Origin: Hydrolagus affinis | Lineage: Eukaryota | Direction of reading: 5' to 3' | NCBI GenBank assembly: GCA_012026655.1 | Contig: JAAILG010001248.1 | Location: 1-64,000 of the forward strand | DNA length: 64,000 bases | Shown here: in pieces, positions 774 through 38,235 of the stretch | Position numbering within the stretch: position 1 is the stretch's first letter | How the letters are laid out: each line of letters opens with the position of its first letter | Translations under genes and position numbers: made by a program | The notes under the pieces: generated by a model | What the model was told of the DNA's origin: nothing | Seen by the model: only the letters and a program-made list of their open reading frames with translations | The model's database searches: none

Positions 774-1799
774 CTGTGTAAAAACAGCACAAGAATATAA
801 GACAAGTTCCTAATAAACTATGACAGCACTGGAATTAACTCACTATCACTAGCCATCTCCTATTCTGATCTATTCCATTTGTGGGACACTGCTGTGCGCA
901 ATTGGCTGCCATGTTTCACCCACATATATACTGTACAGTCAATTCACTTTGGTGGGGTGTGTTGCTTGGGTTGACTACCTTAATTTAATTCCTTGTTGGC
1001 AAGAGCTAACAACGTTGAAGAGGTGCAGATGTGTTTTTTCTCACTGCCTTCCCAGTCACTGAGGGCTGCAAGCAAAGCATGCTGTACTACTTGCAGCAAC
1101 ATCCTCTGTCACAAGTCATTTGATGTTTGCTCAACTACAACCCTATAACAGACTCATTGCATCTCTACACTGTGTGAAGTCCTATGTTTGAAGATGTTCC
1201 TTCCCTCCCTCCCTCCCTCCCTCCTCCCTCCAATAATCTGCCCTAAGCACTATTTTCCTTTTCACAGTAGGAAAGATGGTAGGAGAATGCTGGTTATGTA
1301 CTTTGACAATTAATCAAACAGAATCCAAAGTCAAAAAAGCGGGAGTTTTACTGCCACTCTATAAATATTATAAGGATTTTTTCAGGGAAGAAATTCATTC
1401 AGGAATTTCTGGCTTACACATTTCATATGTAAACAAGGAATCAGTTTGTGGGTTGGAAGGGGTGAGGAATTGGCGGATTGGAATTGGAATGGCAAATGAT
1501 AGCCGCAGAGATCTGCAAAATGTATCAGAGTAACAGTGATTTTAGCCGATCATGTCTGTCACCATTTCAAAATTGGCCCCTACACACATACAGGTGGGGT
1601 TGCAAGCCAAAATACCATTTAAGAAAATCTTGACATTGGTAACCCACTTGCTTTAAAAAAACACCAGGATTACTTTTTGTCTACTGAACACACTTCAGGA
1701 AATATATTTACAGCAAAAGTGAATGAGGTGATATGATCATCATAAGTGGTTCAGAGGAATGACCATGTACAGTTATGAAAAGGATCTGTGGGATAATTC

Positions 1800-2290
1800 A
1801 AACAAACCCACATAAACCTTTCCGCCAACAAACTACCACTGCCCACCTCGCAGACACAATCACCCCGGCAACAACACTCCCAAGCTACAACTAGACTCCA
1901 TATTCCATGCACACACCACGCACACTTTCAAAACACACACATAAATACACCCCACAACTACATATCAGACATACCCCCCCACCCACACACACACATAAAA
2001 CTCTTACACCATTTGAAACACACACCACATATATATACCACCCACACAAGCACACCCCCACACACAAAACACAATCCATCAATACCATCATAACTCAATA
2101 CATAATCATAACTCAATACACAAATAAAACACATTTCCATCCTCATATCCACATCTGCACAAACTCCAAATCACACACATCAGTACATACTTACACCCAC
2201 TGTACACACACCACAAACATACACACACACATGCCATATAGTGCCACACCCTATACACACACACCAGAGACATGAATACACATCCACATA
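1800..2290. repeat. CA-rich low-complexity tract / degenerate (CA)n
   Basis: Almost G-free on + strand with many ACAC runs. Confidence 0.85.
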
Positions 2291-4499
2291 GCCATTTTGG
2301 CCCATTTTGTTAAAAGAACGTACAGAAAACCAGCTTCACAATGAAAGACTGTATGGGCGCTGGCTGCCATCTGGGACACCATCTAAGTGGACATGGTTCA
2401 TATGTGAGACTTGGCAATGAATTTTGGCAGACTGTAGGAGCATCACAGCCAAGGCTGCCTAGCCCCCACCCTGCTCTCCAGCCAACACACGCAAACAGTA
2501 CTGAAAACGGACCTCAAGAAGGAACCCAGGTTGGTTTCCCCCTCCCTAACCCCGGTGAGGGCTGGGGTCAATTTAGCTCCACAAGCAGACGATTTGAAGA
2601 CCAGTAAACTCAGCATAAACCAGTGTGTTTCCAGTCTGTAAGCTGCAGCTCTGTCTATTACATTATTGGGGCTGCCACCATAATAATTTTGAACTAACAA
2701 TTGATCAAGCATTTTTCTCAGTTGAGGCCTTAGTCAAATTGATTTCCCATGGGGTTAATCTTACAGTTCTGAAGTAAGAGCAGCAAACAATTCTCCAGGG
2801 GAAAAACTCCATAAATGGGATGATCTGTCTCTGCTGCGAAAGCCCCACATTTGCTCAGATATGATGAAATCTTTAAGAACACCCAAAACAACACTTACCA
2901 TCTAAGGAGGAGCAGACACAATCACAGTTTGGAAGGATTTTTACTAAGGCAGATTGCTTACTCATTGCTGCCAAAACATTTTTCTCCCTGTCTGGGTTTC
3001 ATGGATACATAAGAAATCTCGGACATGCGGATCAGACAGACAGAGGCAGCCAGTGAACCATTACACTGGCCATGCACATCAATGAAATTTAGACTTTCCC
3101 ACTGGGGTAGCACTGCTCCCACAACTAAAATAATGTATACATTCTTAGATTTTTTTCATGCTTAATTTCATAAATTAAAATGAAAAGCAGCCATGAATGC
3201 TGAGCGAGTGTTGTCAAGCTGTATACGCAGGGCTCGTCAGCAAAGTTCACGCTGGCAAGTAATGGCACCGAATGTTATCTATGGTTAAAAATACCACCAC
3301 AAATTACTGAAACATAAAATGTCTCAAGACATGATTGAGCAGCAATGAAATGTTTCTTGTATACACTCTAGCCAAACTGAGTCCAGCTCCAAAGTTTCTG
3401 ATCAGATCATTTAATTGTCCAATTTATCCTAAAGTTGGCAAGATGGCTAATGTCCCATCAATTAGTATCAAACCATGTCTGGTCCTATCTGCAAACTCAG
3501 TTCTTGGCATCCGTCTTAACAGGCGCTTAACATGTGCAACCATCAAGAGCATGGACCAAATTTAAATACCTGTATGAGCAAAGAGGGCCTAACCCTTACA
3601 TTATTTATGGCTGCACAATGTAAGATCAATGTAAGGACAAACTCGAGATTAGGGAGTAATTCTACTGCCAAGCAAAGGGTGGAAACACTTGTGGTTCAGG
3701 AAACAGTCTCCAGCAGAAACTGTCTGCAGAAACCTAACTTTTGCAAGAAACTTCTCCTATGACACTAATCTCTATTTTATGGCATTGTATCCTTTGAATC
3801 AATCTAAGGTGGTAGATTGGAAAGGAGGGAGTGATCCAGTCTTGTGGTGCTAATGATTTCAAACTGATCCAAGCATAGTATGCCCTTTATGACCTTTAAG
3901 TCATTTCTCAGTAGTTTTACAGTTTCAGGCTTCTCTTCTGCAACATTGTTTTCACACTATACCTTTAGAGTCAATTTAATACTGCAAAAACAACAAAAAA
4001 ATTACATTTATAGAGTGCCTTTCACATCAGGAGGACGTCCCAAGGCCCTAGCAATATAGATTGATTCAAGGTTCAAAACTGCCCCTAGCCCATTGGTAAT
4101 TGTAGTTCCACAGAAAGTGATTTCAGACATGGAATCGATGCCTAGCACTGTAGTATTAAAGTTCAAAGTGCTTCACAGGTTATACTGTAAAGTGGTATGT
4201 GACCTGTGTATTTTGTGGCCAAAAAACAGAAAAACCACATGTACAATATTTTTCTTTGCAGGCACGGCAAAACATTCTGACCAATCTGCAAATAGTCTGC
4301 GCAAAGCAATCCAGGGCCTTTGGTCAGTTTGCTAAATGCACTTTTTATCTGGTTATACTTTTATTAAACTGTCAATAATGTTAACTCGACCTTGGGGAGT
4401 CTGCGTGGTACCATTTGCGTCATGCTGAAGTAGGAGAAGCCATTTGTCATCAAGAGCTCAGTTTGACAGCCAACAATACAGTTTTTCAGGAATGCAAAT

Positions 4500-6284: not shown

Positions 6285-6455
6285 CTGTGTTTCTCTTGGG
6301 ACAAAGGGCACAGTTCATACCCCACGCTTCTCCATACAAACAGCAACACTCAGTATAAGTAGTCGATCTTCCCGGTAAAGGCGAGGCACATATCAATTTG
6401 TTATTCACAGCTTGCCAGCAAATGTCCTGGTACACATCTGCTTCCTCAGTTTGCA
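6285..6455 (-). CDS. LTBP1: LTBP1 TB4 exon ([57 protein letters not shown])
   Basis: 171 nt; tcttag| ... |gtaagc; inside ORF 6223..6456. Confidence 0.96.
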
Positions 6456-9500: not shown

Positions 9501-11742
9501 TACTGAAAAGCTGGCACAGAGACAGAAAATAAAACAGTGGAGACACAATTTGGAAAAATAAACATTTTTACTTCAAGAACTAGAAAATTATTACAAATAA
9601 AATTTCTCTTGAACTGTAAATCTGATACATGAATCAAAATAGTTTGGTTTCACCCTGTAAAGCAATATCTTAAAATAATGCAAACTCTGTAAGGTGTCTG
9701 CAGTTCACTGGAACATTGTGTGCAACAGTAACAGTGTGAGTTACAACAATATTGACATGCCAGTATATGATATTCTTGCATGAAGTGTGTTCCAACATGT
9801 TTTTTTTTAGTTACAGATCTACAGAGCTCTGTCTGCTGAGCCCTAGGAGGACACATCGCTCAAAGAAGATCCAGGTGCTGGTCAAAAACTCCTCAGAGAA
9901 TGCCCTCGCAATCTCTGAATGGAGCCAGGAATTGCAACTTTTGGGGGTTCCTAATTTTGTACCAAGGTGGTGATCATATAGAATTGGAAAACCTGTTGTG
10001 TCAATTCCGCCCAATCCAATCACATATTTAAGTATTGATATCTTGGCATTGTGCATCCCAGAGCACAGGCACGGGCATCACATGGAACAAACCTTCCTCT
10101 GTCTTTTTCTGGGACGATGGTGAGTTTATGGAAAGGCCAAACACCTCTTTCAATTGGCTGGCCTGTCTTTTGGTACAGACCCTCTACATTGTACTGTGTA
10201 CCTCACTATACTCCAGAGTTGAACTCTGTAGCAGAAGTAAGGGTCTGCCTCCCACTTCGGGAGGCAGCACAGTGTGAAATCTGGTTCCTAAAAAGGCACA
10301 GCTTTGATGACTAACTATTAGTCTCTTCTTTGTCAAAGAATCCAATGCATTGTGTTTCAACACTCTCTTGCTCCCAGAGGACAATCGCTTTAGGACTGGA
10401 TGAAAACAAAGCCTCTGTAAAGACAAGCGTATCCATTACTTTGGAGTATATCATTGAAGAATAATTTATTTATTCGTAGGTGTAGCTGAGGAATATGCAA
10501 AGATCACTGTTTATCATGCATTTTCATCACTTTACAAGCTACATGAGTTAAGTGTTTAAAAAAAAAGGCAATGTGAATATCTCACCTACCAAGCTGCTTG
10601 AGAAACTCTGATGAGGTGCTGTCTTCCTCACCAAGTGCAGTGAAATACTTGATATTCAGTGAATTCTGCTTCACAACAATAGGAAGAGGTGATATCCAAG
10701 GATCAGGATGATGGACGAAAGACGTTGCTGTGAGCCCTTGGCTATCACAAGCCCCTTAACCCGTGGTACATTTTCATACCAACTATTAAGCATTCCTTGC
10801 AGGGATCTGTGTCTCCTTTGTTGTAATTGTTTGCATTTTGAAATTCACATTGATCTTTTTTTGATCTTTTGAGATGAATGGATTGCCAATGGCAATTCTG
10901 AACACTTTGCAGAACCTTTGCTCTTAACTTTATGCTCTGTCAAGATCTGAGTTGTCTTATGACCAGTTGTGAATTGGAAGAGTAGAAATTGTGTTCCCCC
11001 TCCTCTGCTTCCCTCCCCTCCCTCCCCTCTAGAAAAATGTCTTCATGTCCAATAAACTGTTTGTCGAGAAAAAAAATTCTACAAAATTCTACTTCAGAGA
11101 AATGTGATCATCTTTAAGTTGTTGCTTTGGCCTCCATATTCCATCCTCTGCCATCACCAGTGTACATCATTCAGTAGCATAGCACACATACCTTTACTGT
11201 GTTCCTCACTGAGAAAGTGCATTTCATCAGTGGAGACTAGCAATATTATTGCAATCAACTTACCTCTTGCAGTAGATTAAGATGCACAGTTAGCAAATGA
11301 ACTTACCACATAACTGTGTAAAGTATATTGACGGTTTTGGATAGTCCAAAAAATAAACCATACCATCACTGTTTAACTTGCGCCAAAATCACAGTTTCTA
11401 AAGAGTTGGTGACATTTTAATGAAAATGTAGTTTTAACATGAGGAATCCATTGAGAATAGTATAATGGGGCCACCACATTCACAAGAACTATATGTGGCT
11501 GTAAAGAGATTCTTCTGAATAAGGTAGAGAGCTGACCATTTCCAATCTCCAGAGATACAGCTGAGGCAACAAAAAAACAAGGAGCACCCACCAGAAGACT
11601 ACTCTTCCATCAGGATCTTCCTTTCATACCAAGAATCTACACAAATGTACACTGACATTGTCAGTCTCATTGATAGATTAGTCTCTCTCTAGGGCTTGTG
11701 TACAATGCACGTTGCATATTCAGTTATCCTGCAGTCACATAC

Positions 11743-11883
11743 CTCTAATATCTGAAGGTTCAAGGCAGCGTTTTCCTGTACTGTCCAGGATCATAGGGTG
11801 TGTGCAGAAACAGTTGTATGAACCATCTGTGTTAATGCACTGACCATTAATGCAGTTTAATGGATTTTGACATTCATCGATAT
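11743..11883 (-). CDS. LTBP1: LTBP1 pre-TB4 cbEGF exon, duplicate copy B (DIDECQNPLNCINGQCINTDGSYNCFCTHPMILDSTGKRCLEPSDIR)
   Basis: 141 nt; ttcccag| ... |gtatgt; inside ORF 11735..11950. Confidence 0.92.
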
Positions 11884-12636
11884 CTGGGAACGAAAGGAAA
11901 CAATCAAACCATTGGGTATCAATACTATAAACAAATATGTAAGGGATCATTCAGGCAAGAATAAAATTTTAATTCAAAACCTTTAGAATCTACTGTTTCT
12001 AACTTCCAGTTAGTGTTTAACAATAGAGTTAAACAATAAGGGAAAGTAGAAGAGTATCTCGTGTATTGAATAGGAATTACCAAATTGTGCAGAAGACAAT
12101 GTTCTTCCCCTTCATTCAACATCTTTCTCAATGCCAACATCAGGTAACATTTGTCTTCCAACTTGTGGACTAAAATTTAACTGCTGGCTGGTTAGCCGAA
12201 TTAGTGATTTTTAGTACTGTATACAAATACAGTACTCAGGAGTAAAACTGTGCCCCGACTAACCAGCAGCTGTAGTAGGGTCACAGGAGATCACAGCCAG
12301 TGAAAAGTCATTTGGGGTCCCTTTCTGCTTTGTGCTGCAGAGATGTCAATCCCACTATATTTTCAGTGACAGCCTCAGTTAGCAGATGTTTTAATACATT
12401 GTGTTTGAGTGCTGTTATTATTGTGTTTTGAGTGCTGATGTATCTTATTTTGCAGGACTACCTTTATATGGTAATACATACAGAGTGCAAGCCAACTGAA
12501 CACCAGTGCAGTCATTTACTTGGGGAAGATGATATTTAATCATTTAACATTTGCTGACCTTGAAATCTGTGCTTTCAACATATTTACAGCAGATTTTAAT
12601 ACAACTAAAAGTTCATATACTTGGCAGGTCAGTATG

Positions 12637-13011
12637 TGTTTTCAAGTCCCTCCACTCCTCTGCATCCCTCTACCTCTCTGACCTCCACTCTCCCCAAACC
12701 AGCCCCCGCTGCCTTCGCTCCACCGGGTCTGGCCTCCTCCATGTCCCCCAAATCCTCCGCTCCACCTTCTGCGGCCGTGCTTTCAGCCACTATGCCCTAA
12801 GGCTCTGGAACTCCCTTCCTCACTCCCTTCGCCTTGCCCCCTCTCTTACTAGTTTCAGGTCACAGCTAAAGACCTTTCTCTTCAAACGCGCCTTTGGTCA
12901 CCTTTCTATCCCTGCCACTGGCTCAGTCCCGGGATCCACTACTGTGAAGCGCTCTGAGACGCTGTCCGGGATGGAAGGCTCTATATAAATCAAAGTTGTT
13001 GTTGTTGTTGT
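12637..13011 (+). mobile_element. L2 LINE 3' end (tail type A)
   Basis: FKSLH...LYLSDL...RCLRS...GRAFSHYALRLWNSLP in ORF 12551..12988; (GTT)n tail. Confidence 0.88.
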
Positions 13012-13084
13012 GTACATTCAGCTATTTATATATGTCCTACTGATTCTCCTATACAAAAAATCCATATATTTAGCAACATTTAAC

Positions 13085-13190
13085 AAACTGTTTGTGATTA
13101 TAAACAATATATAGTCAATTCACTATAGGGTATATTCTGTGAAGTGCTTCGAGACATCTCGAAGACATGATAAGGCGACATACAATTTCA
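13085..13190 (+). mobile_element. Deu-domain SINE tail fragment
   Basis: gtcaattcact..tatattctgtgaagtgcttcgagacatctcgaagacatgataaggcg. Confidence 0.7.
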
Positions 13191-13269
13191 TAAGTTTACA
13201 GTGGGCCCAATAAATGCAAACGGAACTTAGGTTTTACATGTTGGAGCAGAGTTCTTGTAGTGATGTAAG

Positions 13270-13645
13270 AATAATAATAATAATCCTTGCATTTGATATT
13301 GGGCTTTTCATGTCTTCTGGATGTCTCAAAGTGCTTCACAGAATATACTGCAAAATGAATTGACTGTAAATATGTGGGTGAAACACGGCAGCCAATTGCG
13401 CACAGCAGTGTCCCCACAAACAGTCGTGGATTGACATCTGCTAAATTGAATGGTTCGGGTGGCTTCATGAATCTTCAGAGCAAAAGTCTAAATGACCAAT
13501 TTATTATTGTTTTTTTCTTTTTCAAGGGATTATTATCAGGCAGGTGAAGTAAGGAAACTTGCCCAAGGTTTTGCCCTGCCTGGAATCAAACTTGGGTCTT
13601 TCATTTGCAAGGCGAGTGCTCTAACCACTGAACTGCAGGACTCCA
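13270..13645 (-). mobile_element. Full-length tRNA-derived Deu-domain SINE (with about 50-bp internal insert)
   Basis: tRNA-like head near 13580-13645, Deu core 13380-13430, tail plus (TTA)n. Confidence 0.85.
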
Positions 13646-13867
13646 TAGTTCTGGATAACAATTCAAACTAAAATCTGCACAACAGTAACTACCATTATTA
13701 TAGCCTAGATTAGCTCATTTCAGAGTGCTAATGTACAGAGGGATTTAAATGCCACACATAGGTACTTTAGAAACTGCCATCACACTATATACAGTATAAT
13801 TAATCGTAGATATCGCAACATACCTATAAAATGTATAAAATGACAGGTTACGCCTGCTGGTACCTAC

Positions 13868-14008
13868 CATCAGAGTCTGGAACTTGAATACAGCGTCTTC
13901 CTGTGCTATCCAAGACCATTGGGTGTGTGCAGAAACAGTCAAATGAGCCCTCAGTGTTGCTACACTGACCATCAATGCAGCTAGCTGCATCATGACATTC
14001 ATCGATAT
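13868..14008 (-). CDS. LTBP1: LTBP1 pre-TB4 cbEGF exon, duplicate copy A (DIDECHDAASCIDGQCSNTEGSFDCFCTHPMVLDSTGRRCIQVPDSD)
   Basis: 141 nt; ttatag| ... |gtaggt; open frame, 6 Cys. Confidence 0.9.
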
Positions 14009-14778
14009 CTATAAGTGAAGGAAAGAATTTGGTACCTCAGTGGGTAACACCATTTTACAGGAAAGCACAGCAATTCAGTAAAGGTAAAATGTTCTCTTTG
14101 TCCTTCTTCCACTTTTTCTCAAACGACAGAGGAAACCTTAAAACAATCCCACGAATGTGGTCAATTTAACCAAAGAGGTCAGTGTTTTTGCCGTTCTTAT
14201 TTCATTTCAGGAAAGTGGATTGAAAAGGTAACTAAAAACCTACTCTAGAAGGTGGCGAGGGAGGGGGGAAGGCTAAAGAACTTGGTCAGTGGGCCAGAGC
14301 ATTATAAGGTAGCAATTTTCGACCACACGATTATGATGATACATTACACTAGATGAGAAACTGGAGAACAGCCAGTGTTTGAGAGTCCTGCACCACTTTG
14401 AGTGGCCTTGTTTCACTGCAGAGTAAAATATGGCTTTGAGATATTCTCCTACATGAAAGGCACTACATAAATACAGATTATTTTGTTTTGTGGACCAACG
14501 TGGCAGCCAATTTGCTCAAAGTAACATCCCACAAACAGCAACAAAGTACTGTAAATGGTCAGTTTCATTTTTACTGTGTGCTGTAGTTTGAGTCATTTTT
14601 AATAGTTTCTTGAGGTCATGACTCACGGTAAGATCAAACTGCTAATGTGGTCAAGATTCCTCAATCGGTTTGCTAACCATATTGGTGAGCAAACTGTACC
14701 AGTAGTTGTGAACACAAGCATATAGTAACATTTTCTGCAGTAATCTGCAGTATTCCAACATATAAGAAAATCACTTAC

Positions 14779-14907
14779 CGAGGCACTGTAGTTTAACAGG
14801 GTCGTAATACAAGCCCTGTCTGCAGTAGCACTCATAGCCGGGCTGAGTGTTCAAGCAAAATCCATTCTTACAGATTTCTTCTCTAAATATGGCACATTCG
14901 TCAGCAT
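14779..14907 (-). CDS. LTBP1: LTBP1 cbEGF exon after TB3 ([43 protein letters not shown])
   Basis: 129 nt; ttacag| ... |gtaagt; translated by hand; very close to recalled LTBP1 [29 protein letters not shown]. Confidence 0.96.
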
Positions 14908-15479
14908 CTGTAATCAGAAACCAAAAGAATGTATAAACCAAATGACTTTATTGAAAGATGAGGCTGGTCTTATACCTTGCTCTATAGCTGCTCGTATAGC
15001 TGACTATTAGTTCCATTTTCTTACCTATGAAGTAGACCAGGATGGTCCAACCAATTTAGGGCAGAGGGACGAACCTCACACGCGAGAGATGTCCATTGGC
15101 TACCTAAACTATATTTTTGTTTTCCCTTCCAGAAACATAAATAGTCATATAGAAATCCTAGGTTTTAAATTGTGTGACTTATCACTTAGCAATGATCATC
15201 CCAAATGGCAAAAGAATGCAACAAGCTTTTTCAATGTATTAAAGTCAAAACACAAGATATAAACTCATCACATGGAGGCCCCAACAGAGAACGCTCCACA
15301 AAACCCAAACAAATTAAGCGCAAATTGCAAAACTAACAAACGATGAAGATACTTTTGGATAAAGATTGTTTTGAATATATAATTCAAATAATATCAACAA
15401 TATACGAAACAAATTTCATACAATCCACTCTAAATCTACATACAGTATAATCAAATTATTTTACTTAATATACATTTCC

Positions 15480-15975
15480 ATGACATTTAGAAGTCCACTG
15501 AATGTCTCAGTGTGAACATTATACAAGCCAGTATATTTGTTGTATTTTGTCTTGTGTCGTGATATTACTTGCAAGCAAACAAGGCACTGAGCTTTTCCAT
15601 TATTTAAATAATCCCTCAAAAAAGTAGATTTTGTGAAGCTCTTTTGGAGATGTCTAGAAGACGTGAAAAGCGCTATATCAAATGCAAGGATTATTATTAT
15701 AATATATAATAACAATAATAAAAGACAATTTCCCACTTACACTCTATTTTGCACTTCTAGATTCTGTTTCTTACTTGGCCTAGATTCTCGCTGTGTCTCC
15801 CCAGGTTACATTAGAAGTCCTCAAGCTCCGCCTGTCTTTCTGTTACTCTCCGTGCGGCCTTCTCCTGCTGCAGCGAGCAGACCAACCACAAGAGAGATGC
15901 GGGGTGGGGAGATAAATCTAAAGTACAAAATGGTTTGCAGGCCACATAAAATCTCCTGCCAGGCCGCCCAAGTGC
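15480..15975 (-). mobile_element. Degenerate hAT (Buster/Charlie-like) fragments interrupted by a SINE tail at about 15630-15700
   Basis: Peptide DYLNNGKAQCLVCLQVISRHKTKYNKY resembles the GK.CL.C...RH..KH N-terminus of Buster/SPIN transposases; gcaggccacataaaat..ggccg resembles Charlie-type subterminal sequence. Confidence 0.45.
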
Positions 15976-31700: not shown

Positions 31701-32231
31701 TAATGTGGTCAATATGTTTCCTTTGATAAATATTTTTCTTAGAATGATGACTGTGGTTCATGGTACAGATGCATTAAAGCAATGAAACATGAAGGATCCA
31801 AGAAAACTCAAACTGGGCTCCTTTTGAAAGCAGAGTTCGTGGAACAAAGCTTTGCTCCATACATACAATGCCAACGGTTCCTTAAACATGGTGCTGGGGA
31901 AGAAAAGCGAATGTTTTGATAGGGTGAGTCGGTGCCTAAAACTAATCAGAGAAACTCTACTGACAACAAGAGATTGTTCCATTGTAGATCAGGTGTTCAA
32001 CCTCTGTAGGACATGCTGGTTTAACTGCTGATTTGCAGATCCAGCAGTAGTATTGCTTTGAGCAATACCCATTCCTAAACCACATGTCACCTAGAGACTA
32101 TTTCTATAGAATACAAAAACAGAAGTGGCAAGTACAGCTGATGCGGAAGCAAGTCAGAGAGGTATAACTCTATAGGTTAGTTGTCACAGCACACCTCCAC
32201 ATCTTTACAGTGCGTCTTTGGTCCAACTCAC

Positions 32232-32360
32232 CAACACAGATCCCTGAAGATTTAAGAGAGTAGCCAGGCGGGCAATCCATGATGCATTTGTAAGAGCCAA
32301 TAGCATTTTCACATCGCCAAGATCCACAGATGTTGCTGTATTCTTTACATTCATCAATGT
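32232..32360 (-). CDS. LTBP1: LTBP1 cbEGF exon, LTBP2-type extra domain 2 (DIDECKEYSNICGSWRCENAIGSYKCIMDCPPGYSLKSSGICV)
   Basis: 129 nt; gtgcag| ... |gtgagt; inside ORF 32170..32385; unusual C4-x3-C5 spacing. Confidence 0.93.
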
Positions 32361-35300
32361 CTGCACAGAGAGTAAAGTAATGCATCCTTATTCCTCACCT
32401 CAGCATTTGTGGACTACCTGTGCTTTCCGACAGAGTTAGATCATCTTTTGGACTTGTGATCAGCTCAGATACTACCAACAAATACAGATGTTTAAAGTCA
32501 TGCTGTTAATCTTGAGATATACAAGCCCAATTTTCCCCTGGGAGCTGACTATCTGCACTTGGGTGACAGTAATTGCCCTTCCTCAATCCAGTCACAAAGT
32601 TTGGAGCTTTAATGTCTCTTGATCTCTACTGGGTGAAAATGCGGGGGAACGTGTGGACTAACCATAGGACTGGCCAGTGCTTGTTCGCTATTACTGAAGC
32701 AAAAAATGAACGTAGAGATAAGAATATCTGCAAAATAATAACACAAGAGGGCAGCAGGTCACTTTGCAACAAAGCAGAAGGATGTGGATTCCTACAAAAT
32801 GAGTCCCCGACCTCATCTAGAGCGAGGGTTTGTCAGTCACGGAGCAATAAGAGATCAACATGAAGAACAGGAATTAAGTCCAGCGTCTTCTTGTGGCTAG
32901 TTATAGAGCAGGACTGGAGGCCGGCCTGGAGACTGCCTTCCTGCCTGCTTGGTCAAGGAATCGTGGTGTGATGGCAAAGAGGGGAAGGATGGTGCCAAAA
33001 AGGGGCAAGAATATAAGTTACAAGTTGGGAGTGGGGCGTAAAAGCACCCTTGTGCTGGAAGCCCTGTCAAGTAGGTTGATTAAATTGTAAAATGTGTTTT
33101 TTTTACCTGGTTTCACGGCATTTTGTATGCAAACTCGTTCTGTCATTTTTTTGCAATTATTTATTTTCTAATTTATAGGCCGGTGGTAGGTTATCCCCCT
33201 CCCTCCCAAGCTTTGCCATTCGCTTGTTGACTGAGCCTCAAGAATAGTGCAACATTGCAGTTTAATTCATTTATTGAATGCTATTAAACTAGCCCAATAG
33301 CCCACTAACCTGCTCTCCATTGCCACTGGCCTGCACTTCATGGGTGAATGACACTGCAGAACCAGCAATACAATTTGGGCAGAATTTTATGATTGTGAAA
33401 GTGGCCATTTGTGATAATTAATGCAATGTAATTTTTCAACCTAGGTTGAAAACAGTTCCAGAATACTGTCCCCAAAATTAGTGCTGGCAACTGAAAAGGG
33501 GAAAATGGGGCCCACCTACAGACTGGTGATAAAATAGGATTAGTGATGGCGCCGCTCCATCAATGTTACTGAACTCACAATGAGGAAAAAATGTAAGAGA
33601 TATTTGTTAGTTAGGCTGTGAATATTAGACATTTGGCATGGAACATATGGATAGAACCTTACACACATCCTACATTAAATAATACAGGACAAAGTTTGTA
33701 TCTTTCTATGATGGTTGATGATAAATTCACTCCCCTGTCCCCGATGTGACAATGGACCATTGGATTTACATGTTGCCCCCTTCCAGAGGCCCTAGTCCTT
33801 GTCTTTAGATAATTGTTTTAGGGGAAGCTACTTTGAGATGTCCCAACACTAAACCAATTGCAAGGATTATTACTAAGCCAATCTTTCTGCAGTTTTTTGT
33901 TTTAAATGAGAACCAGCTTCCAAATTAAACTATTTTCAAACTTCTGCATGGTCATAAATTTTAATCCAATGGTCTTGAAAGTTGAAGAAGAATTTTGAGA
34001 CGCAGGTGTCAGGTCCAATCAAACAATATTGGTCATCAACGTTCATAGAGCAAACACAATCCAAAAACATTACTGCTGCATTTCACTTGGGAGAAGGCTT
34101 TCACTGCATACTCCTTTTCCTGGATCCTCCCTATGTGCAACTAGGATTTACTGGGACTCTCCCTCATAGCTTATTCTGGGTCTCACACTCACCAAATTAA
34201 AGCAGTAAAACCTCCACCATCAGCAGGACCTTTCTCATGCAACAAACACAGACAACACAATTATTGAGCAATGCACCACAAACAACATTCTAATTGCCCT
34301 TCCACCAGTTACGTAAAGTTGTGTCATGCGCTCGATTACATTACAAATGTTTGTAATACCTTTGACAAGTTTACGGCTCGGCAAAGATGTTCAACAGGCA
34401 AGAATTACAAACTCACATGTACCGAATCAGGAAGTCAATATCATTCATAACAACATTGCATTTTATGAATGTTATGTAAAATAACAGATACTTGTTCAAG
34501 ACTATTTAGCTCTATTTGGCGATGCAGGGAACATTTGTGGAACACTCACACTTCACTCTTGTCAAGATTTCACACTTGTAGTCTATGCCCTTCTCTGAGA
34601 GTTGTAATCCATTTGGTCAAATCTCTTTAAGGTATCTACAGTGTTATATTTAGAACTTTTAATGGGTAGTATAAAATGTGCATGACTAAACACTGTGAAC
34701 CTAGTCTTCTCAAGCAAAGGAATAGCAAACAAAGGCAATAGTTAATCAACAATTTGTAAACGTCAGTCGTTTTCAGATGAATTAAAATCCATTACAATGA
34801 TGCTCAACAAGTCAGGGTCTGATCTTTTTCAACTTTATTCCGTTTTCCTTGCATTGACAATGCCTTGGCAAGTGCTTATCAAAGAGGGAGCAATGAAGGC
34901 CATCCATCTAAGATTAGATACTGATTTATTGCCCATTCTGTGTACAGTAGTGTTATTGTGCTTGGCAATCTAAGGCAAGTTTACCAGAGTAGATCAGTAA
35001 CAACTCTCCCTCTCTAGACATAGGTATCAGCGATTGCCCTAACTCAGGTGGAGATTGTGGACCTATTGAGAAGATGTAAATGAGATGCAAAACTTCTCTA
35101 CTTTTGGATTTTCAATGTAGGGTTACCACCAGTCCCAATCCAAGGAGCACAGACCTGGATTTATTAAGAGCTCCATGTCCTGCTGCTACCTTGATCAGGT
35201 TGCCAAATGTCTGGGCTTTTCCCGTGCATGCTTTTTGTTTTCTTCATGTAATACCACAGGGTGCCTGTCTGTGGTCTGGGTGTAAACGGTGACCTGATGA

Positions 35301-36652
35301 CTATCTTATCGTACAGTGCTGAAGTGCTCGCCAACTCCTGAAACCTTAATCTGAAGAGTGTGTTGACACTGGCAATGCATCAAGAATGAAGCTTTTGATC
35401 ACAGAATGAAGTTTGACGGTTGCCACCCAGCCTTCTGTGTTTAGTCATTCTCTATAAAAACTGCACTCTGCTGACTGCATTAAATTTAATGGTCTTTCAG
35501 ATGTTTTACATGTGAACTAGGAGAGAGCAGTTCTGTGGATGTATAACCGTAGATCTAAAACAATCCCATGGATGTGCATCAGTATTACTATCTGAGTATA
35601 GTATAATGTGGCACTTTATGTACCCCTGAAGTCTTCAATAGTCAAGAATCTTAAGCTACGTCTAACTATGTAATGTGAGTAAGGACCAGCAGTGAATCAA
35701 TAACTGGAGCTATAATCACACGCACCATGTCTATCTGTGCGTAATAAAATATAAAGAGTAGTATTATTCCACCTTGTATACATATTTCTTTTCCAAAATT
35801 CACTAAACCTTTACTCTTGATTTTGTTTTTACCTCTTGTCAGATCTCACAAGCAAATCCATCACCCCTAAACATCTAAGACTGAGACCTCAGCATAGGCC
35901 TGTTATTCCACCCAAACATACCCCAGAAGATTACAATGTCATCATTCTTAAAATTCAAGAGCGATTAGAATTGCAGACTTTTTAAAAAAAATTCAGACTC
36001 AATTTGAAAGCTGTTTTCTGCAGCTCTTAAATGGACATTGCTTGCGAACGATGCCTGAATTCAAGAGTTTTCTACAATTCTGCAGATTCTTAAGTTTATA
36101 ACAAAATTGTCTTACTGGCTAGGACTGGGAAAAATTTCAGGCCATGTGTGGGTAATGGCAGACCCACACACCGTACTGCAGAGTGAGATGCTGCACTGGT
36201 TTGTTAGTGCACAGTGATACTAGATTGACCCAAGTCAGTAAACATTTCAAGGCAGTCCTGTTCCATAGCCAACTCTAAAACAAGACTTAACCTAGCCAGA
36301 ACACACGCTACTGTAGAGGAACACGGAATAAAATTGAAGTCATCAATCAGATGGATTGTTGGATCTGCACATACACAAATCCTCAGTTTGATTATTTGCC
36401 TTTTGAATATGGAATCCATTCCACATATTCCCTACTCCATGCAAATTGATAAATCTGAACTGTCTGTTCACTTTCCTCCCAGTGATTTTGAGTCTCTGCT
36501 CCCTGGCTCTAGATATTTTGATTATACTAAAAGCATGATTTGGGATCAATGTGTTTATTTTTAAGAATACTTAAGAACTTCAAGTTTCTGTCATTTTTCT
36601 TGTTAGCATTTTTGATACGATCCATTTTTAACAAGAAACAAAGGTCATTTAC

Positions 36653-36775
36653 CAATACATGTTTCACTTGTAGGGCTGAGGTGGAAACCTTTGGTACATT
36701 CACATCTATACGAGCCATCAGTATTCACACAAGTGCCGCCGTAGCATTTGGTACGAGCTGCACATTCATCAAAAT
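36653..36775 (-). CDS. LTBP1: LTBP1 cbEGF exon, LTBP2-type extra domain 1 (DFDECAARTKCYGGTCVNTDGSYRCECTKGFHLSPTSETCI)
   Basis: 123 nt; ttgcag| ... |gtaaat; 6 Cys and Ca-binding consensus; translated by hand. Confidence 0.92.
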
Positions 36776-37039
36776 CTGCAAAATATAGACACTTCACACA
36801 TTAAATACAGTCAACTCCTACAAAACCCAAGGCTACAGAGATTGATCAACTGAACGTGATACTGGTCTCAAAGGTTAGGGGGTGGGAGGTAGAGGGTGGG
36901 GAGAAATGTAAAATAAAAGAGAAAGATTTGATTCTTTTAAGAACTACAGAAATCCAGTTTTAAAGTTAAGACTGAATTCAACAAATTGCCTAATTCTGGA
37001 AGCTGTAAAGTTTGCCCAAGCGAAATCCTGAATCCACTT

Positions 37040-37330: not shown

Positions 37331-37944
37331 GAGGCACCTTGGCATGTCCTCCCGATGTGAAAGGTGCTAGACAAATTTTATATTGTATTATTATCATTGG
37401 AGTACTTACTGTCACATTAAAGCTTTCCTCCAAATGTGCTCCACATCCTAGATCAAGCACTAGACACCCCCACCCACTCCATTCGCAAGTGTACACCTGA
37501 TCAAGTCAATTTCTGTGCAAACTGGTTCAATAACCATTCGCAACATACTCCTTCACCCGAAAAACCACAATCAGGCATTTTTGAGAACTGCAGACATTTG
37601 CCTTGCAAGTTCCATGCAAATATCTTCTAATGTTAAGATTACAGTTCTAAAATGTCTTTGTGTGGATTACAATGACAGTAATCGCTCCACTTACCCAAGG
37701 CACTTTGGGGTTTATCAGGTTTTTTGATCTTCAGATGAAAATCATGGGACTGACTTAATGCCTTAAGACTCTGCACAATGACATTACTGCAGTGCTGTGC
37801 TTCAGTTCAGATAACCCTTGGGTTCTTTCGCAAGTACATTGGTATTAGGTACAAAAATGCATTAAATCTAAACGAGCTTTGTGCTTTTTTAAGCAAGCAA
37901 AATGTTCTTGGCTAAACTTTATTCTATTATACCCAAGGTAGTTT

Positions 37945-38235
37945 CCGTTCACACACTTGCACGCACACACAATAGCCGCATTCAAACTCACCATGAATAC
38001 CCACAAACACACACGGATGCATGCATACACATACAAATGCACGCATGCATACATATACACAGATGCACATGCAGACAGACTCACACAAATGTAGATACTG
38101 TACACATGTACATCCACGTATTGCTGGACATTAAATGGCATAAAGGACATATATCAACAGACAAACTCAGGCAGACTCAATAAACATCAGAGATGCATAC
38201 ACAGGCACACAAACATGCATGACTGTACATGTACA
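37945..38235. repeat. Degenerate (CA)/(CATA)/(TGCA) alternating purine-pyrimidine tract
   Basis: cacacacggatgcatgcatacacatacaaatgcacgcatgcatacatatacac... Confidence 0.8.

What the first reader, a model, noticed from the sequence alone, without database searches (positions are those of the whole stretch)
11743..14008. Tandemly duplicated cbEGF exon just before TB4: possible mutually exclusive or extra-domain switch in LTBP1
Seen in sequence: two 141-nt, phase 1-1 exons, 1984 nt apart, encode the same domain type. They share 29/47 aa, an identical first 16 nt and a 19-nt ACTGTTTCTGCACACACCC block. Both keep all 6 Cys, the D-I-D-E-C and C-x-N-x-x-G-S-F/Y Ca-binding consensus, and canonical splice sites. 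Nine of the 29 shared residues use different synonymous codons, and I see no similarity in the flanking introns. From recall: mammalian LTBP1 has a single such exon (DMDECQDPSSCIDGQC..THPMVLD), and the C-terminal TB3-EGF-EGF-TB4-EGF region mediates fibrillin/ECM anchoring. Each copy keeps a different subset of the mammalian residues, and the linker into TB4 differs (IQVPDSD vs LEPSDIR). Inference: an old duplication under purifying selection giving A-or-B isoforms or an A+B protein with longer TB3-TB4 spacing, which could tune latent TGF-beta deposition.
Basis: partly seen in the sequence, partly recalled or inferred. Interest (0 to 1): 0.8.

Follow-up and report, generated by a model that had tools for sequence, protein, structure and literature searches.

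The report
Extra calcium-binding EGF domain in cartilaginous-fish LTBP1
A small exon of the matrix protein LTBP1 was copied in tandem long ago in sharks, rays and chimaeras; both copies seem to go into most messages, so the protein gains one more EGF bead and there is no either-or switch.

Summary
Two 141-nt, phase 1-1 exons lie on the minus strand at 14008-13868 (A) and 11883-11743 (B). They are 75% identical, similarity stops at the exon edges, and both are intact calcium-binding EGF domains.

They sit in the LTBP1 gene of a cartilaginous fish, between the preceding EGF exon and the last TB-domain exon.

The "A-or-B switch" reading is not supported:
- In three polyA RNA runs from one sample of a close relative, both exons are covered about as deeply as the upstream constitutive exon. 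(A+B)/upstream is 1.8-2.8; strict mutual exclusion predicts 1.
- Of 84 public shark and ray LTBP1 models that cover the region (at least 19 species), 83 carry A and B in tandem. One skips A and none skips B.
- All 75 bony-vertebrate LTBP-family models examined, 4 lamprey or hagfish proteins and the solved LTBP1 chain carry one copy.

So this is an old, probably stem-chondrichthyan, tandem exon duplication that adds a mostly constitutive extra cbEGF before the last TB domain. It is already present, without comment, in automatic annotations. I found no paper describing it. Splice junctions were not seen directly. Interest is modest.

The parts
14779..14907 (-). Upstream cbEGF exon (129 nt, phase 1-1). 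It is the first of the EGF domains between the LAP-binding TB domain and the last TB domain, and serves as the constitutive reference exon.
   Evidence: Sequence and splice sites read. Pfam EGF_CA 29.2 bits. 34-39 of 43 residues identical to shark and ray LTBP1. RNA depth about 73/40/140 in runs X2/X3/X4.
13868..14008 (-). Exon A: the upstream copy of the duplicated cbEGF exon (141 nt, phase 1-1). It is the derived 'A-type' copy.
   Evidence: RNA depth about 69/52/160. Groups with the 17 elasmobranch A copies, support 87/82.
11884..13867 (-). The 1984-nt intron between the two copies. It is filled with highly repeated SINE-like elements at about 12608-13727 and shows no similarity to the other flanks.
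   Evidence: no flank repeats; inverted arms 13107-13174 / 13304-13371. (huge repeat depth in bins 12608-13727, about zero depth elsewhere in the intron).
11743..11883 (-). Exon B: the downstream copy (141 nt, phase 1-1). It is the 'B-type' copy that joins to the TB exon.
   Evidence: RNA depth about 61/58/174. 83% identical to shark B copies.
6285..6455 (-). Exon for the last TB (8-Cys) domain plus its N-terminal linker (171 nt, phase 1-1). It is the acceptor for exon B.
   Evidence: splice sites, translation. Pfam TB 50.1 bits on the enclosing ORF.

Best explanation
An ancient tandem duplication of a single exon in LTBP1 is shared by chimaeras, sharks and rays. It is absent from every bony vertebrate, lamprey and hagfish sequence examined.

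The exon encodes the calcium-binding EGF domain that precedes the last TB domain, plus 7 residues of the following linker. Both copies appear to be spliced into most of the mRNA. The protein therefore reads TB - cbEGF - cbEGF(A) - cbEGF(B) - TB instead of TB - cbEGF - cbEGF - TB.

Because the duplicated unit carried its linker residues along, A and B are separated by 11 residues between Cys6 and Cys1, not the canonical 5. Inferred, not shown: the extra domain behaves as one more bead on a flexible stretch. It would lengthen the tether between the propeptide-binding TB domain and the fibrillin-binding C-terminal TB-EGF region, rather than forming a new binding site or a splice switch.
For: RNA evidence (three polyA RNA runs, one sample, a close relative):
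- Mean depth on upstream exon / A / B is about 73/69/61, 40/52/58 and 140/160/174.
- Introns outside the repeats are at about 0.
- All exon reads are on one strand orientation.
- (A+B)/upstream is 1.8, 2.8 and 2.4, against 1 expected for exclusive use.

Public protein models:
- of 89 elasmobranch LTBP1 sequences, 83 have A and B adjacent, 1 has B only, and 5 do not cover the region.
- 16 of 16 elasmobranch models have two copies; 0 of 61 bony-vertebrate LTBP1 models do.
- 0 of 14 further bony-vertebrate models (12 LTBP1, incl. sturgeon, paddlefish, bowfin; 2 LTBP2-like) have two copies.
- lamprey and hagfish LTBP1-like proteins have one copy.
- the solved LTBP1 chain 9r3s_C has one strong match (64 bits; next best 12).

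Orthology of the copies:
- all 18 A copies, including the window's, form one clade (87/82).
- four alignment columns have disjoint residues between all A and all B copies. A copies are 82% and B copies 85% identical on average. All keep the Cys and calcium consensus. dN/dS for A against B in the window is 0.37.

Domain spacing: Cys6-Cys1 spacing is 5 for upstream to A and 11 for A to B.

Literature (passages seen):
- PMC3906135 section 10: this domain ('cbEGF14') lacks the glycine-aromatic packing motif and is followed by a flexible linker.
- PMC5548924: TB3 and EGF3, not cbEGF14, carry most of the fibrillin-1 binding.
Against: - Splice junctions themselves were not seen. The joints table was filled by repeat-derived joints (816 rows not shown), so inclusion of both exons in the same molecule rests on depth parity and on gene models.
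- The RNA comes from one sample of a related species, not the window's own. Exon B has 5 fixed differences from the window.
- One annotated isoform (Pristiophorus X3) skips exon A, so inclusion is not absolute.
- The AU test does not reject independent duplication in the window's lineage (p 0.277). The single-origin claim rests on 46 columns and moderate support.
- Coelacanth, lungfish, amphibian and bird full-length LTBP1 were not sampled.
- The spacer function is inference only.
Confidence: 0.8

Rival explanations
1. Exon A is a regulated cassette exon. Cartilaginous fishes would make both a three-EGF and a two-EGF (B only) form, with the ratio depending on tissue or stage, so the duplication serves as a length switch.
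For: One of 84 region-covering elasmobranch models (P0404, Pristiophorus isoform X3) lacks exactly the 47 residues of exon A. Both exons are 141 nt and phase 1-1, so skipping keeps the reading frame. A is the faster-evolving, derived copy.
Against: A/B depth ratios are 1.13, 0.90 and 0.92 in the three runs, and A is never below the upstream exon by more than 8%. The other 83 models include A. Only one sample was looked at, so tissue-specific skipping cannot be excluded.
Confidence: 0.12
2. The two exons are mutually exclusive: each mRNA carries A or B, giving two LTBP1 forms that differ in the domain next to the last TB domain.
For: Same length, same phase and homologous sequence, the classic signature of exclusive exon pairs.
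Against: - (A+B)/upstream depth is 1.8-2.8 instead of 1.
- 0 of 84 models have A without B and 83 have both.
- No enforcing mechanism is visible. Exon length is divisible by 3, so including both or neither stays in frame. The intron is 1984 nt, so there is no steric block. Both introns are GT-AG.
- No inverted repeat links the introns flanking the pair (limited sensitivity).
Confidence: 0.03
3. One copy is a dead pseudoexon, or the pair is an assembly or haplotype artefact.
For: None beyond the a priori possibility.
Against: - Both copies are transcribed and cleanly spliced out of their introns at equal depth.
- Both keep all Cys and calcium-binding residues in 18 of 18 species compared.
- The copies are only 75% identical with unrelated flanks.
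- A second organism's DNA contigs show the same arrangement (X1 records 1 and 7).
Confidence: 0.01

Closest known systems
Mammalian LTBP1 C-terminal region: cbEGF13-cbEGF14-TB3-EGF3-cbEGF15 in the Robertson/Handford numbering, or EGF16-EGF17-TB4 in the numbering that counts the hybrid domain (that second numbering is recalled).
   Same: Same gene and same order of flanking domains. Exons A and B are both homologues of the single 'cbEGF14': 64 bits to the solved LTBP1 chain 9r3s_C and 34/64 and 32/51 identities to mouse in local alignments. They share the calcium-binding and POGLUT2/3 O-glucosylation consensus C-x-N-T-x-G-S-(F/Y)-x-C (consensus from PMC8405936, passages seen). As in mammals, they lack the glycine-aromatic packing motif.
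   Different: There are two copies instead of one. An 11-residue Cys6-Cys1 spacer lies between them.
Automatically annotated LTBP1 of sharks and rays (for example XP_078413456.1 Cetorhinus maximus and XP_041071532.1 Carcharodon carcharias; names and accessions).
   Same: The same TB-cbEGF-A-B-TB arrangement. The window's A groups with their A copies, and its B is 83% identical to their B copies.
   Different: The window is 63-75% identical to all of them over 18 exon ORFs. This fits a lineage outside the sampled elasmobranchs; other notes of this scan call it chimaera-type. No model for the window's own species appeared in my searches.
Tandem exon duplications that yield mutually exclusive exon pairs (a general class; recalled, with no LTBP1 example found).
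   Same: Homologous adjacent exons of equal length and phase.
   Different: Here both copies appear to be used together. No frame, steric or splice-site-type incompatibility exists.
Described mammalian LTBP1 splice variants. One is the form lacking the proteinase-sensitive hinge (review PMC8760520; passage and reference list seen). The long/short N-termini and the loss of one mid-protein EGF are recalled.
   Same: In-frame loss or gain of whole modules in LTBP1.
   Different: None of them concerns the domain before the last TB domain.

Membership tests
Calcium-binding EGF domain (Pfam EGF_CA, PF07645) | Profile score above Pfam's gathering threshold | tested here: met
   A scores 30.8 bits and B 31.5 bits against a cut-off of 27.
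Calcium-binding EGF domain (Pfam EGF_CA, PF07645) | Six cysteines; N-terminal D/N-x-D/N-E/Q; and C3-x-(N/D)-x4-(F/Y)-x-C4 (hydroxylation / calcium consensus as quoted in PMC8405936) | tested here: met
   Both translations read: D-I-D-E-C in both; C-S-N-T-E-G-S-F-D-C in A and C-I-N-T-D-G-S-Y-N-C in B. The six-Cys/N-T pattern is kept in 18 of 18 A and 18 of 18 B copies; the first Ca-ligand position is D or N (window B).
LTBP1 orthologue (not LTBP2-4, not fibrillin) | Best matches are LTBP1; the domain lies between two TB domains, with the LTBP1-specific linker after the last TB | tested here: met
   The top solved-structure hit is LTBP1 at E 3e-21, against fibrillin-1 at 1e-11. TB domains flank the exons. 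Window exons are 63-75% identical to named elasmobranch LTBP1. LTBP2 sequences form the outgroup at 98/93. The whole spliced protein was not searched, because the joined step was left out.
Tandem exon duplication | Adjacent homologous exons of the same length and phase, with homology ending at the exon borders | tested here: met
   141 and 141 nt, phase 1-1, 75% identity over 158 nt only.
Mutually exclusive exon pair | Mature transcripts contain exactly one of the two exons | tested here: not met
   Depth on A and on B is each about that of the upstream exon in 3 of 3 runs. 83 of 84 models carry both. Junction reads themselves were not seen.
Mutually exclusive exon pair | A mechanism that forbids double inclusion or double skipping: frame shift with NMD, an intron too short, U2/U12 incompatibility, or competing RNA pairings | tested here: not met
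   141 = 3 x 47, the intron is 1984 nt, and both introns are GT-AG. No inter-intron inverted repeat of 20 nt or more was found. Weaker RNA pairings were not excluded.
Cassette (skippable) exon: exon A | Transcripts with and without the exon in the same species | tested here: inconclusive
   One annotated A-less isoform stands beside A-containing isoforms in Pristiophorus. No depth deficit of A was seen in the runs laid. Junctions were not seen.

The most novel reading that the evidence does not exclude
Exon A is a regulated cassette in cartilaginous fishes. They would then make two LTBP1 forms with different tether lengths between the TGF-beta-propeptide-binding TB domain and the fibrillin-binding C-terminus. 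The extra, faster-evolving bead would tune how latent TGF-beta is presented on microfibrils in a lineage whose skeleton stays cartilaginous.
Probability: 0.12. Interest if true: 0.45.

Novelty: new variant of a known kind. Interest (0 to 1): 0.3.

Why it matters
[quoted passage not shown] This locus shows a clade-wide exception. Cartilaginous fishes have kept one more calcium-binding EGF bead there, apparently since before chimaeras and sharks separated.

It is a natural experiment on tether length in the large latent complex, and a clean example of a duplicated exon fixed as an extra domain, not an alternative one. It is not a new mechanism. Adding cbEGF modules by exon duplication is how this protein family grew, and the arrangement already sits in automatic gene models.

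Tried and rejected
1. Direct junction counts. Read laying returned joints and loose ends only for the repeat block at 12608-13727; 816 joints and 1418 loose ends were not shown.

2. First homologue search (shark LTBP1, residues 1335-1530, containing EGF and TB domains). All 120 rows listed were other EGF-rich proteins (119 fibrillin-type, one coelacanth LTBP4), because many-EGF proteins sum to higher scores. It was useless for the question. I repeated the search with EGF-free linker regions.

3. Finding the window species' own annotated LTBP1, or any holocephalan model. None appeared. The chimaera assignment rests on the scan's earlier notes and on the identity pattern.

4. Coelacanth, lungfish, amphibian and bird full-length LTBP1 did not come up. 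Only a gecko fragment with a single copy was seen. 'Absent from bony vertebrates' therefore means absent from those sampled.

5. AU test for independent duplication: p 0.277, not decisive.

6. Per-copy dN/dS across species. No orthologous DNA was available, since shark genes are likely over the 100-kb limit of the contig tool, which I did not try. I give protein conservation and one paralogue dN/dS instead.

7. Literature.
- 'LTBP1' + 'exon duplication': 2 papers, 1 listed, irrelevant.
- 'LTBP1' + 'mutually exclusive exons': 6 papers, judged from titles and abstract starts to be cancer, breed or donor-site surveys.
- 'LTBP' / 'cartilaginous fish' / 'cbEGF': none of the 12 listed held 'cartilaginous fish'.
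- Searches gave structural and review papers only.
- Supplements were closed. The alignment figure of PMC3906135 and its species list were not visible to me.

8. Structure prediction was not run. It would not have reported interdomain geometry.

9. The joined (spliced) protein model of the window was never built or searched.
Full report
WHAT IS THERE

The window carries, on its minus strand, the C-terminal half of an LTBP1 gene. A six-frame scan shows a run of single-exon calcium-binding EGF domains. These are followed by a TB domain (ORF 22606-22379), another EGF exon (14907-14779), and the two exons of the finding. Next come a TB-domain exon (6455-6285) and a linker exon (ORF 834-535). Pfam confirms EGF_CA for the three EGF exons and TB for both TB ORFs.

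The best solved-structure match of exon A is an LTBP1 chain (9r3s_C, E 3e-21). Fibrillin-1 follows at 1e-11.

THE OBSERVATION

- Both exons are 141 nt and phase 1-1, with AG/GT splice sites, and the intron between them is 1984 nt.
- 106 of 141 nt are identical, the first 16 nt are identical, and there is a 19-nt identical block.
- 28 of 46 whole codons encode the same residue (29 of 47 with the split Asp codon).
- 9 of those residues use different synonymous codons.

A repeat search over 10500-15500 finds the similarity confined to 158 nt around the exons, at 75%, with nothing in the flanks.

Nei-Gojobori distances between the copies are dS 0.67 and dN 0.24, a ratio of 0.37. The pair is therefore old and constrained.

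IS EITHER COPY SILENT, AND ARE THEY ALTERNATIVES?

The run search found no RNA run of the window's own organism. It did find three polyA RNA runs of one sample of another organism (X2-X4), and one contig set that contains introns and so must be DNA (X1).

Results of laying them on 11600-14950:
- The RNA runs cover the three exons and leave the non-repetitive intron bins at about zero.
- All exon reads have the first mate on the plus strand, as expected for a minus-strand gene in a usual stranded library.

I converted the bin means to mean exon depth:

| Run | Upstream exon | Exon A | Exon B | (A+B)/upstream |
|---|---|---|---|---|
| X2 | 73 | 69 | 61 | 1.8 |
| X3 | 40 | 52 | 58 | 2.8 |
| X4 | 140 | 160 | 174 | 2.4 |

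Strict mutual exclusion predicts a ratio of 1. The data therefore say that most transcripts carry both exons.

Weak points of this evidence:
- The joints table was swamped by the SINE-like repeats of the intron, so the junction reads were not displayed.
- All three runs come from one sample.
- The organism differs from the window. Exon B has five fixed differences, of which two are synonymous and three are not.
- No exon A difference appears among the 40 rows shown; 62 rows were not shown.

X1 spans both exons with their introns at about 1% divergence. This independently confirms the genomic arrangement.

RELATIVES

A profile of the two exon peptides was searched against 1.84 billion representative proteins. 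The peptides were aligned as two separate rows and never joined. The search gave 1325 hits, and I examined the best 150.

Exactly 1 of the 150 had two strong matches side by side: P0002, at 96 and 89 bits, which is LTBP1 of the basking shark.

Two further searches used EGF-free linker regions of a shark and a bichir LTBP1. Two cluster look-ups followed. Together they gave a broad sample.

| Group examined | Result |
|---|---|
| 89 elasmobranch LTBP1 sequences, at least 19 species (lamniform, carcharhiniform, orectolobiform, heterodontiform, pristiophoriform and hexanchiform sharks; torpedo rays, stingrays, mantas, skates, sawfish) | 83 have A-type and B-type adjacent; 1 has only B; 5 do not cover the region |
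| 61 bony-vertebrate LTBP1 (teleosts, bichir, mammals) | 0 have two copies: 53 have one domain of 45 bits or more, and 8 divergent teleost sequences have only a weaker one of 34-43 bits |
| 14 further proteins (sturgeons, paddlefish, bowfin, mammals, two LTBP2-like) | 0 have two copies |
| Lamprey and hagfish LTBP1-like proteins; a gecko fragment | single copy |

The five elasmobranch sequences that do not cover the region are four fragments and one Narcine isoform that ends in the intron after the upstream EGF.

The single B-only sequence is Pristiophorus isoform X3. It lacks exactly 47 residues, which is a clean skip of exon A. No sequence has A without B.

AGE AND ORTHOLOGY

The tree used the 46-residue domain: 51 rows, rooted on LTBP2.
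- All 18 A copies, the window's included, form one clade (ultrafast bootstrap 87, SH-aLRT 82; present in 89% of 200 bootstrap trees).
- The B copies sit unresolved with the single copies of bony vertebrates. B looks like the conservative copy and A like the derived one.

Four columns have non-overlapping residues between all A and all B copies, and the window's copies follow the rule.

The window's exon ORFs are 63-75% identical to every elasmobranch LTBP1 and 50-55% identical to bichir, mouse, bass and lamprey. This fits a cartilaginous fish outside the sampled sharks and rays. Earlier notes of this scan call the genome chimaera-type (I did not verify the species).

A single duplication before the chimaera-elasmobranch split is the most economical reading. 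From recall, that split is more than 400 million years old.

The reading is not proven. An AU test does not reject the window's A and B being each other's closest relatives (p 0.277). With 46 columns, gene conversion or parallel change cannot be excluded.

Origin in the chondrichthyan stem needs one event. Origin in the jawed-vertebrate ancestor followed by loss in bony vertebrates needs two.

HOW IT PROBABLY WORKS

Shown: both exons are intact, conserved and expressed at the level of the neighbouring constitutive exon.

Shown: the duplicated unit includes seven residues after the last Cys. Eleven residues therefore separate Cys6 of A from Cys1 of B, whereas the upstream EGF joins A with the canonical five.

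From the literature:
- This domain is 'cbEGF14' in the Oxford numbering. It lacks the glycine-aromatic motif that packs tandem cbEGFs, and a flexible linker follows it (PMC3906135, section 10 read in full; other passages seen).
- Fibrillin-1 binding is carried mainly by the next TB domain and EGF3, with cbEGF14 contributing little (PMC5548924, passages seen).

Inference: the extra copy adds a calcium-binding, probably O-glucosylated bead and a short hinge. Both copies match C-x-N-T-x-G-S-(F/Y)-x-C (consensus from PMC8405936, passages seen). The bead would lengthen the flexible tether between the TGF-beta-propeptide-binding TB domain and the matrix-anchoring C-terminus. Nothing here shows a functional consequence.

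WHY NOT A SWITCH

Depth and gene models are the first two arguments against a switch. A third is that none of the known ways of enforcing exclusive splicing applies. The exon length is a multiple of three, so including both or neither keeps the frame. The intron is long. Both introns are GT-AG. No long inverted repeat links the flanking introns.

Occasional skipping of A is possible and is annotated once. It remains the most interesting open reading.

COMPARISON WITH WHAT IS KNOWN, AND NOVELTY

The arrangement is a lineage-specific variant of the LTBP1 architecture. It already stands in automatic RefSeq/UniRef models of many sharks and rays.

I found no paper that mentions it. The held library lacks most subscription journals, supplements were closed, and the 2011 Biochemical Journal review on TB-domain protein evolution cited in PMC3906135 was not read.

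Growth of this family by duplication of single-domain exons is ordinary. I therefore rate it a real but modest finding. It corrects the 'switch' idea and documents a clade-wide extra domain.

STEP LEFT OUT

All comparisons were made exon by exon.

Noticed in passing
window 32173-32394 and 36648-36800 (minus strand): Two further cbEGF exons match only some shark LTBP1 models well. The 36800 exon gives 33-34 of 40-41 identities in Heterodontus, Pristiophorus and Heptranchias, but about 18-22 of 40-49 in basking shark, catshark and rays (27/40 in Hemiscyllium). Pristiophorus isoform X2 lacks exactly the 43-residue domain homologous to the 32394 exon. That exon may therefore be an alternative cassette. 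This bears on the scan's other note s1-906706.
   Followed up: partly
window 12608-13727 (intron between the two exons): A block of very abundant SINE-like repeats, including inverted arms at 13107-13174 / 13304-13371 (68 nt, 81% complementary). It draws enormous depth in the DNA-type run and hundreds of reads on both strands in the RNA runs. It also swamped the junction table.
   Followed up: no
window 11743-11883 (exon B), runs X1-X4: Exon B differs from the RNA organism at five positions: two synonymous, and three non-synonymous (Q5R, N6D, S34G). It differs from the DNA-type organism at three of these five. No difference in exon A is among the rows shown. This is a hint, on very small numbers, of faster recent change in B in this lineage. 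Across the whole clade, A is the more variable copy.
   Followed up: partly
proteins P0427 (Narcine isoform X6) and P0272 / P0304 (basking shark X4, Pristiophorus X4): Other annotated isoform differences in elasmobranch LTBP1. One form is truncated by read-through into the intron after the upstream EGF exon. Other forms lack 96 or 55 residues of an upstream EGF/TB region.
   Followed up: no
window 1754-2335 and 37848-38153: Cys/Val-rich ORFs on the minus strand that look like translated simple TG/CA-type repeats, not genes.
   Followed up: no
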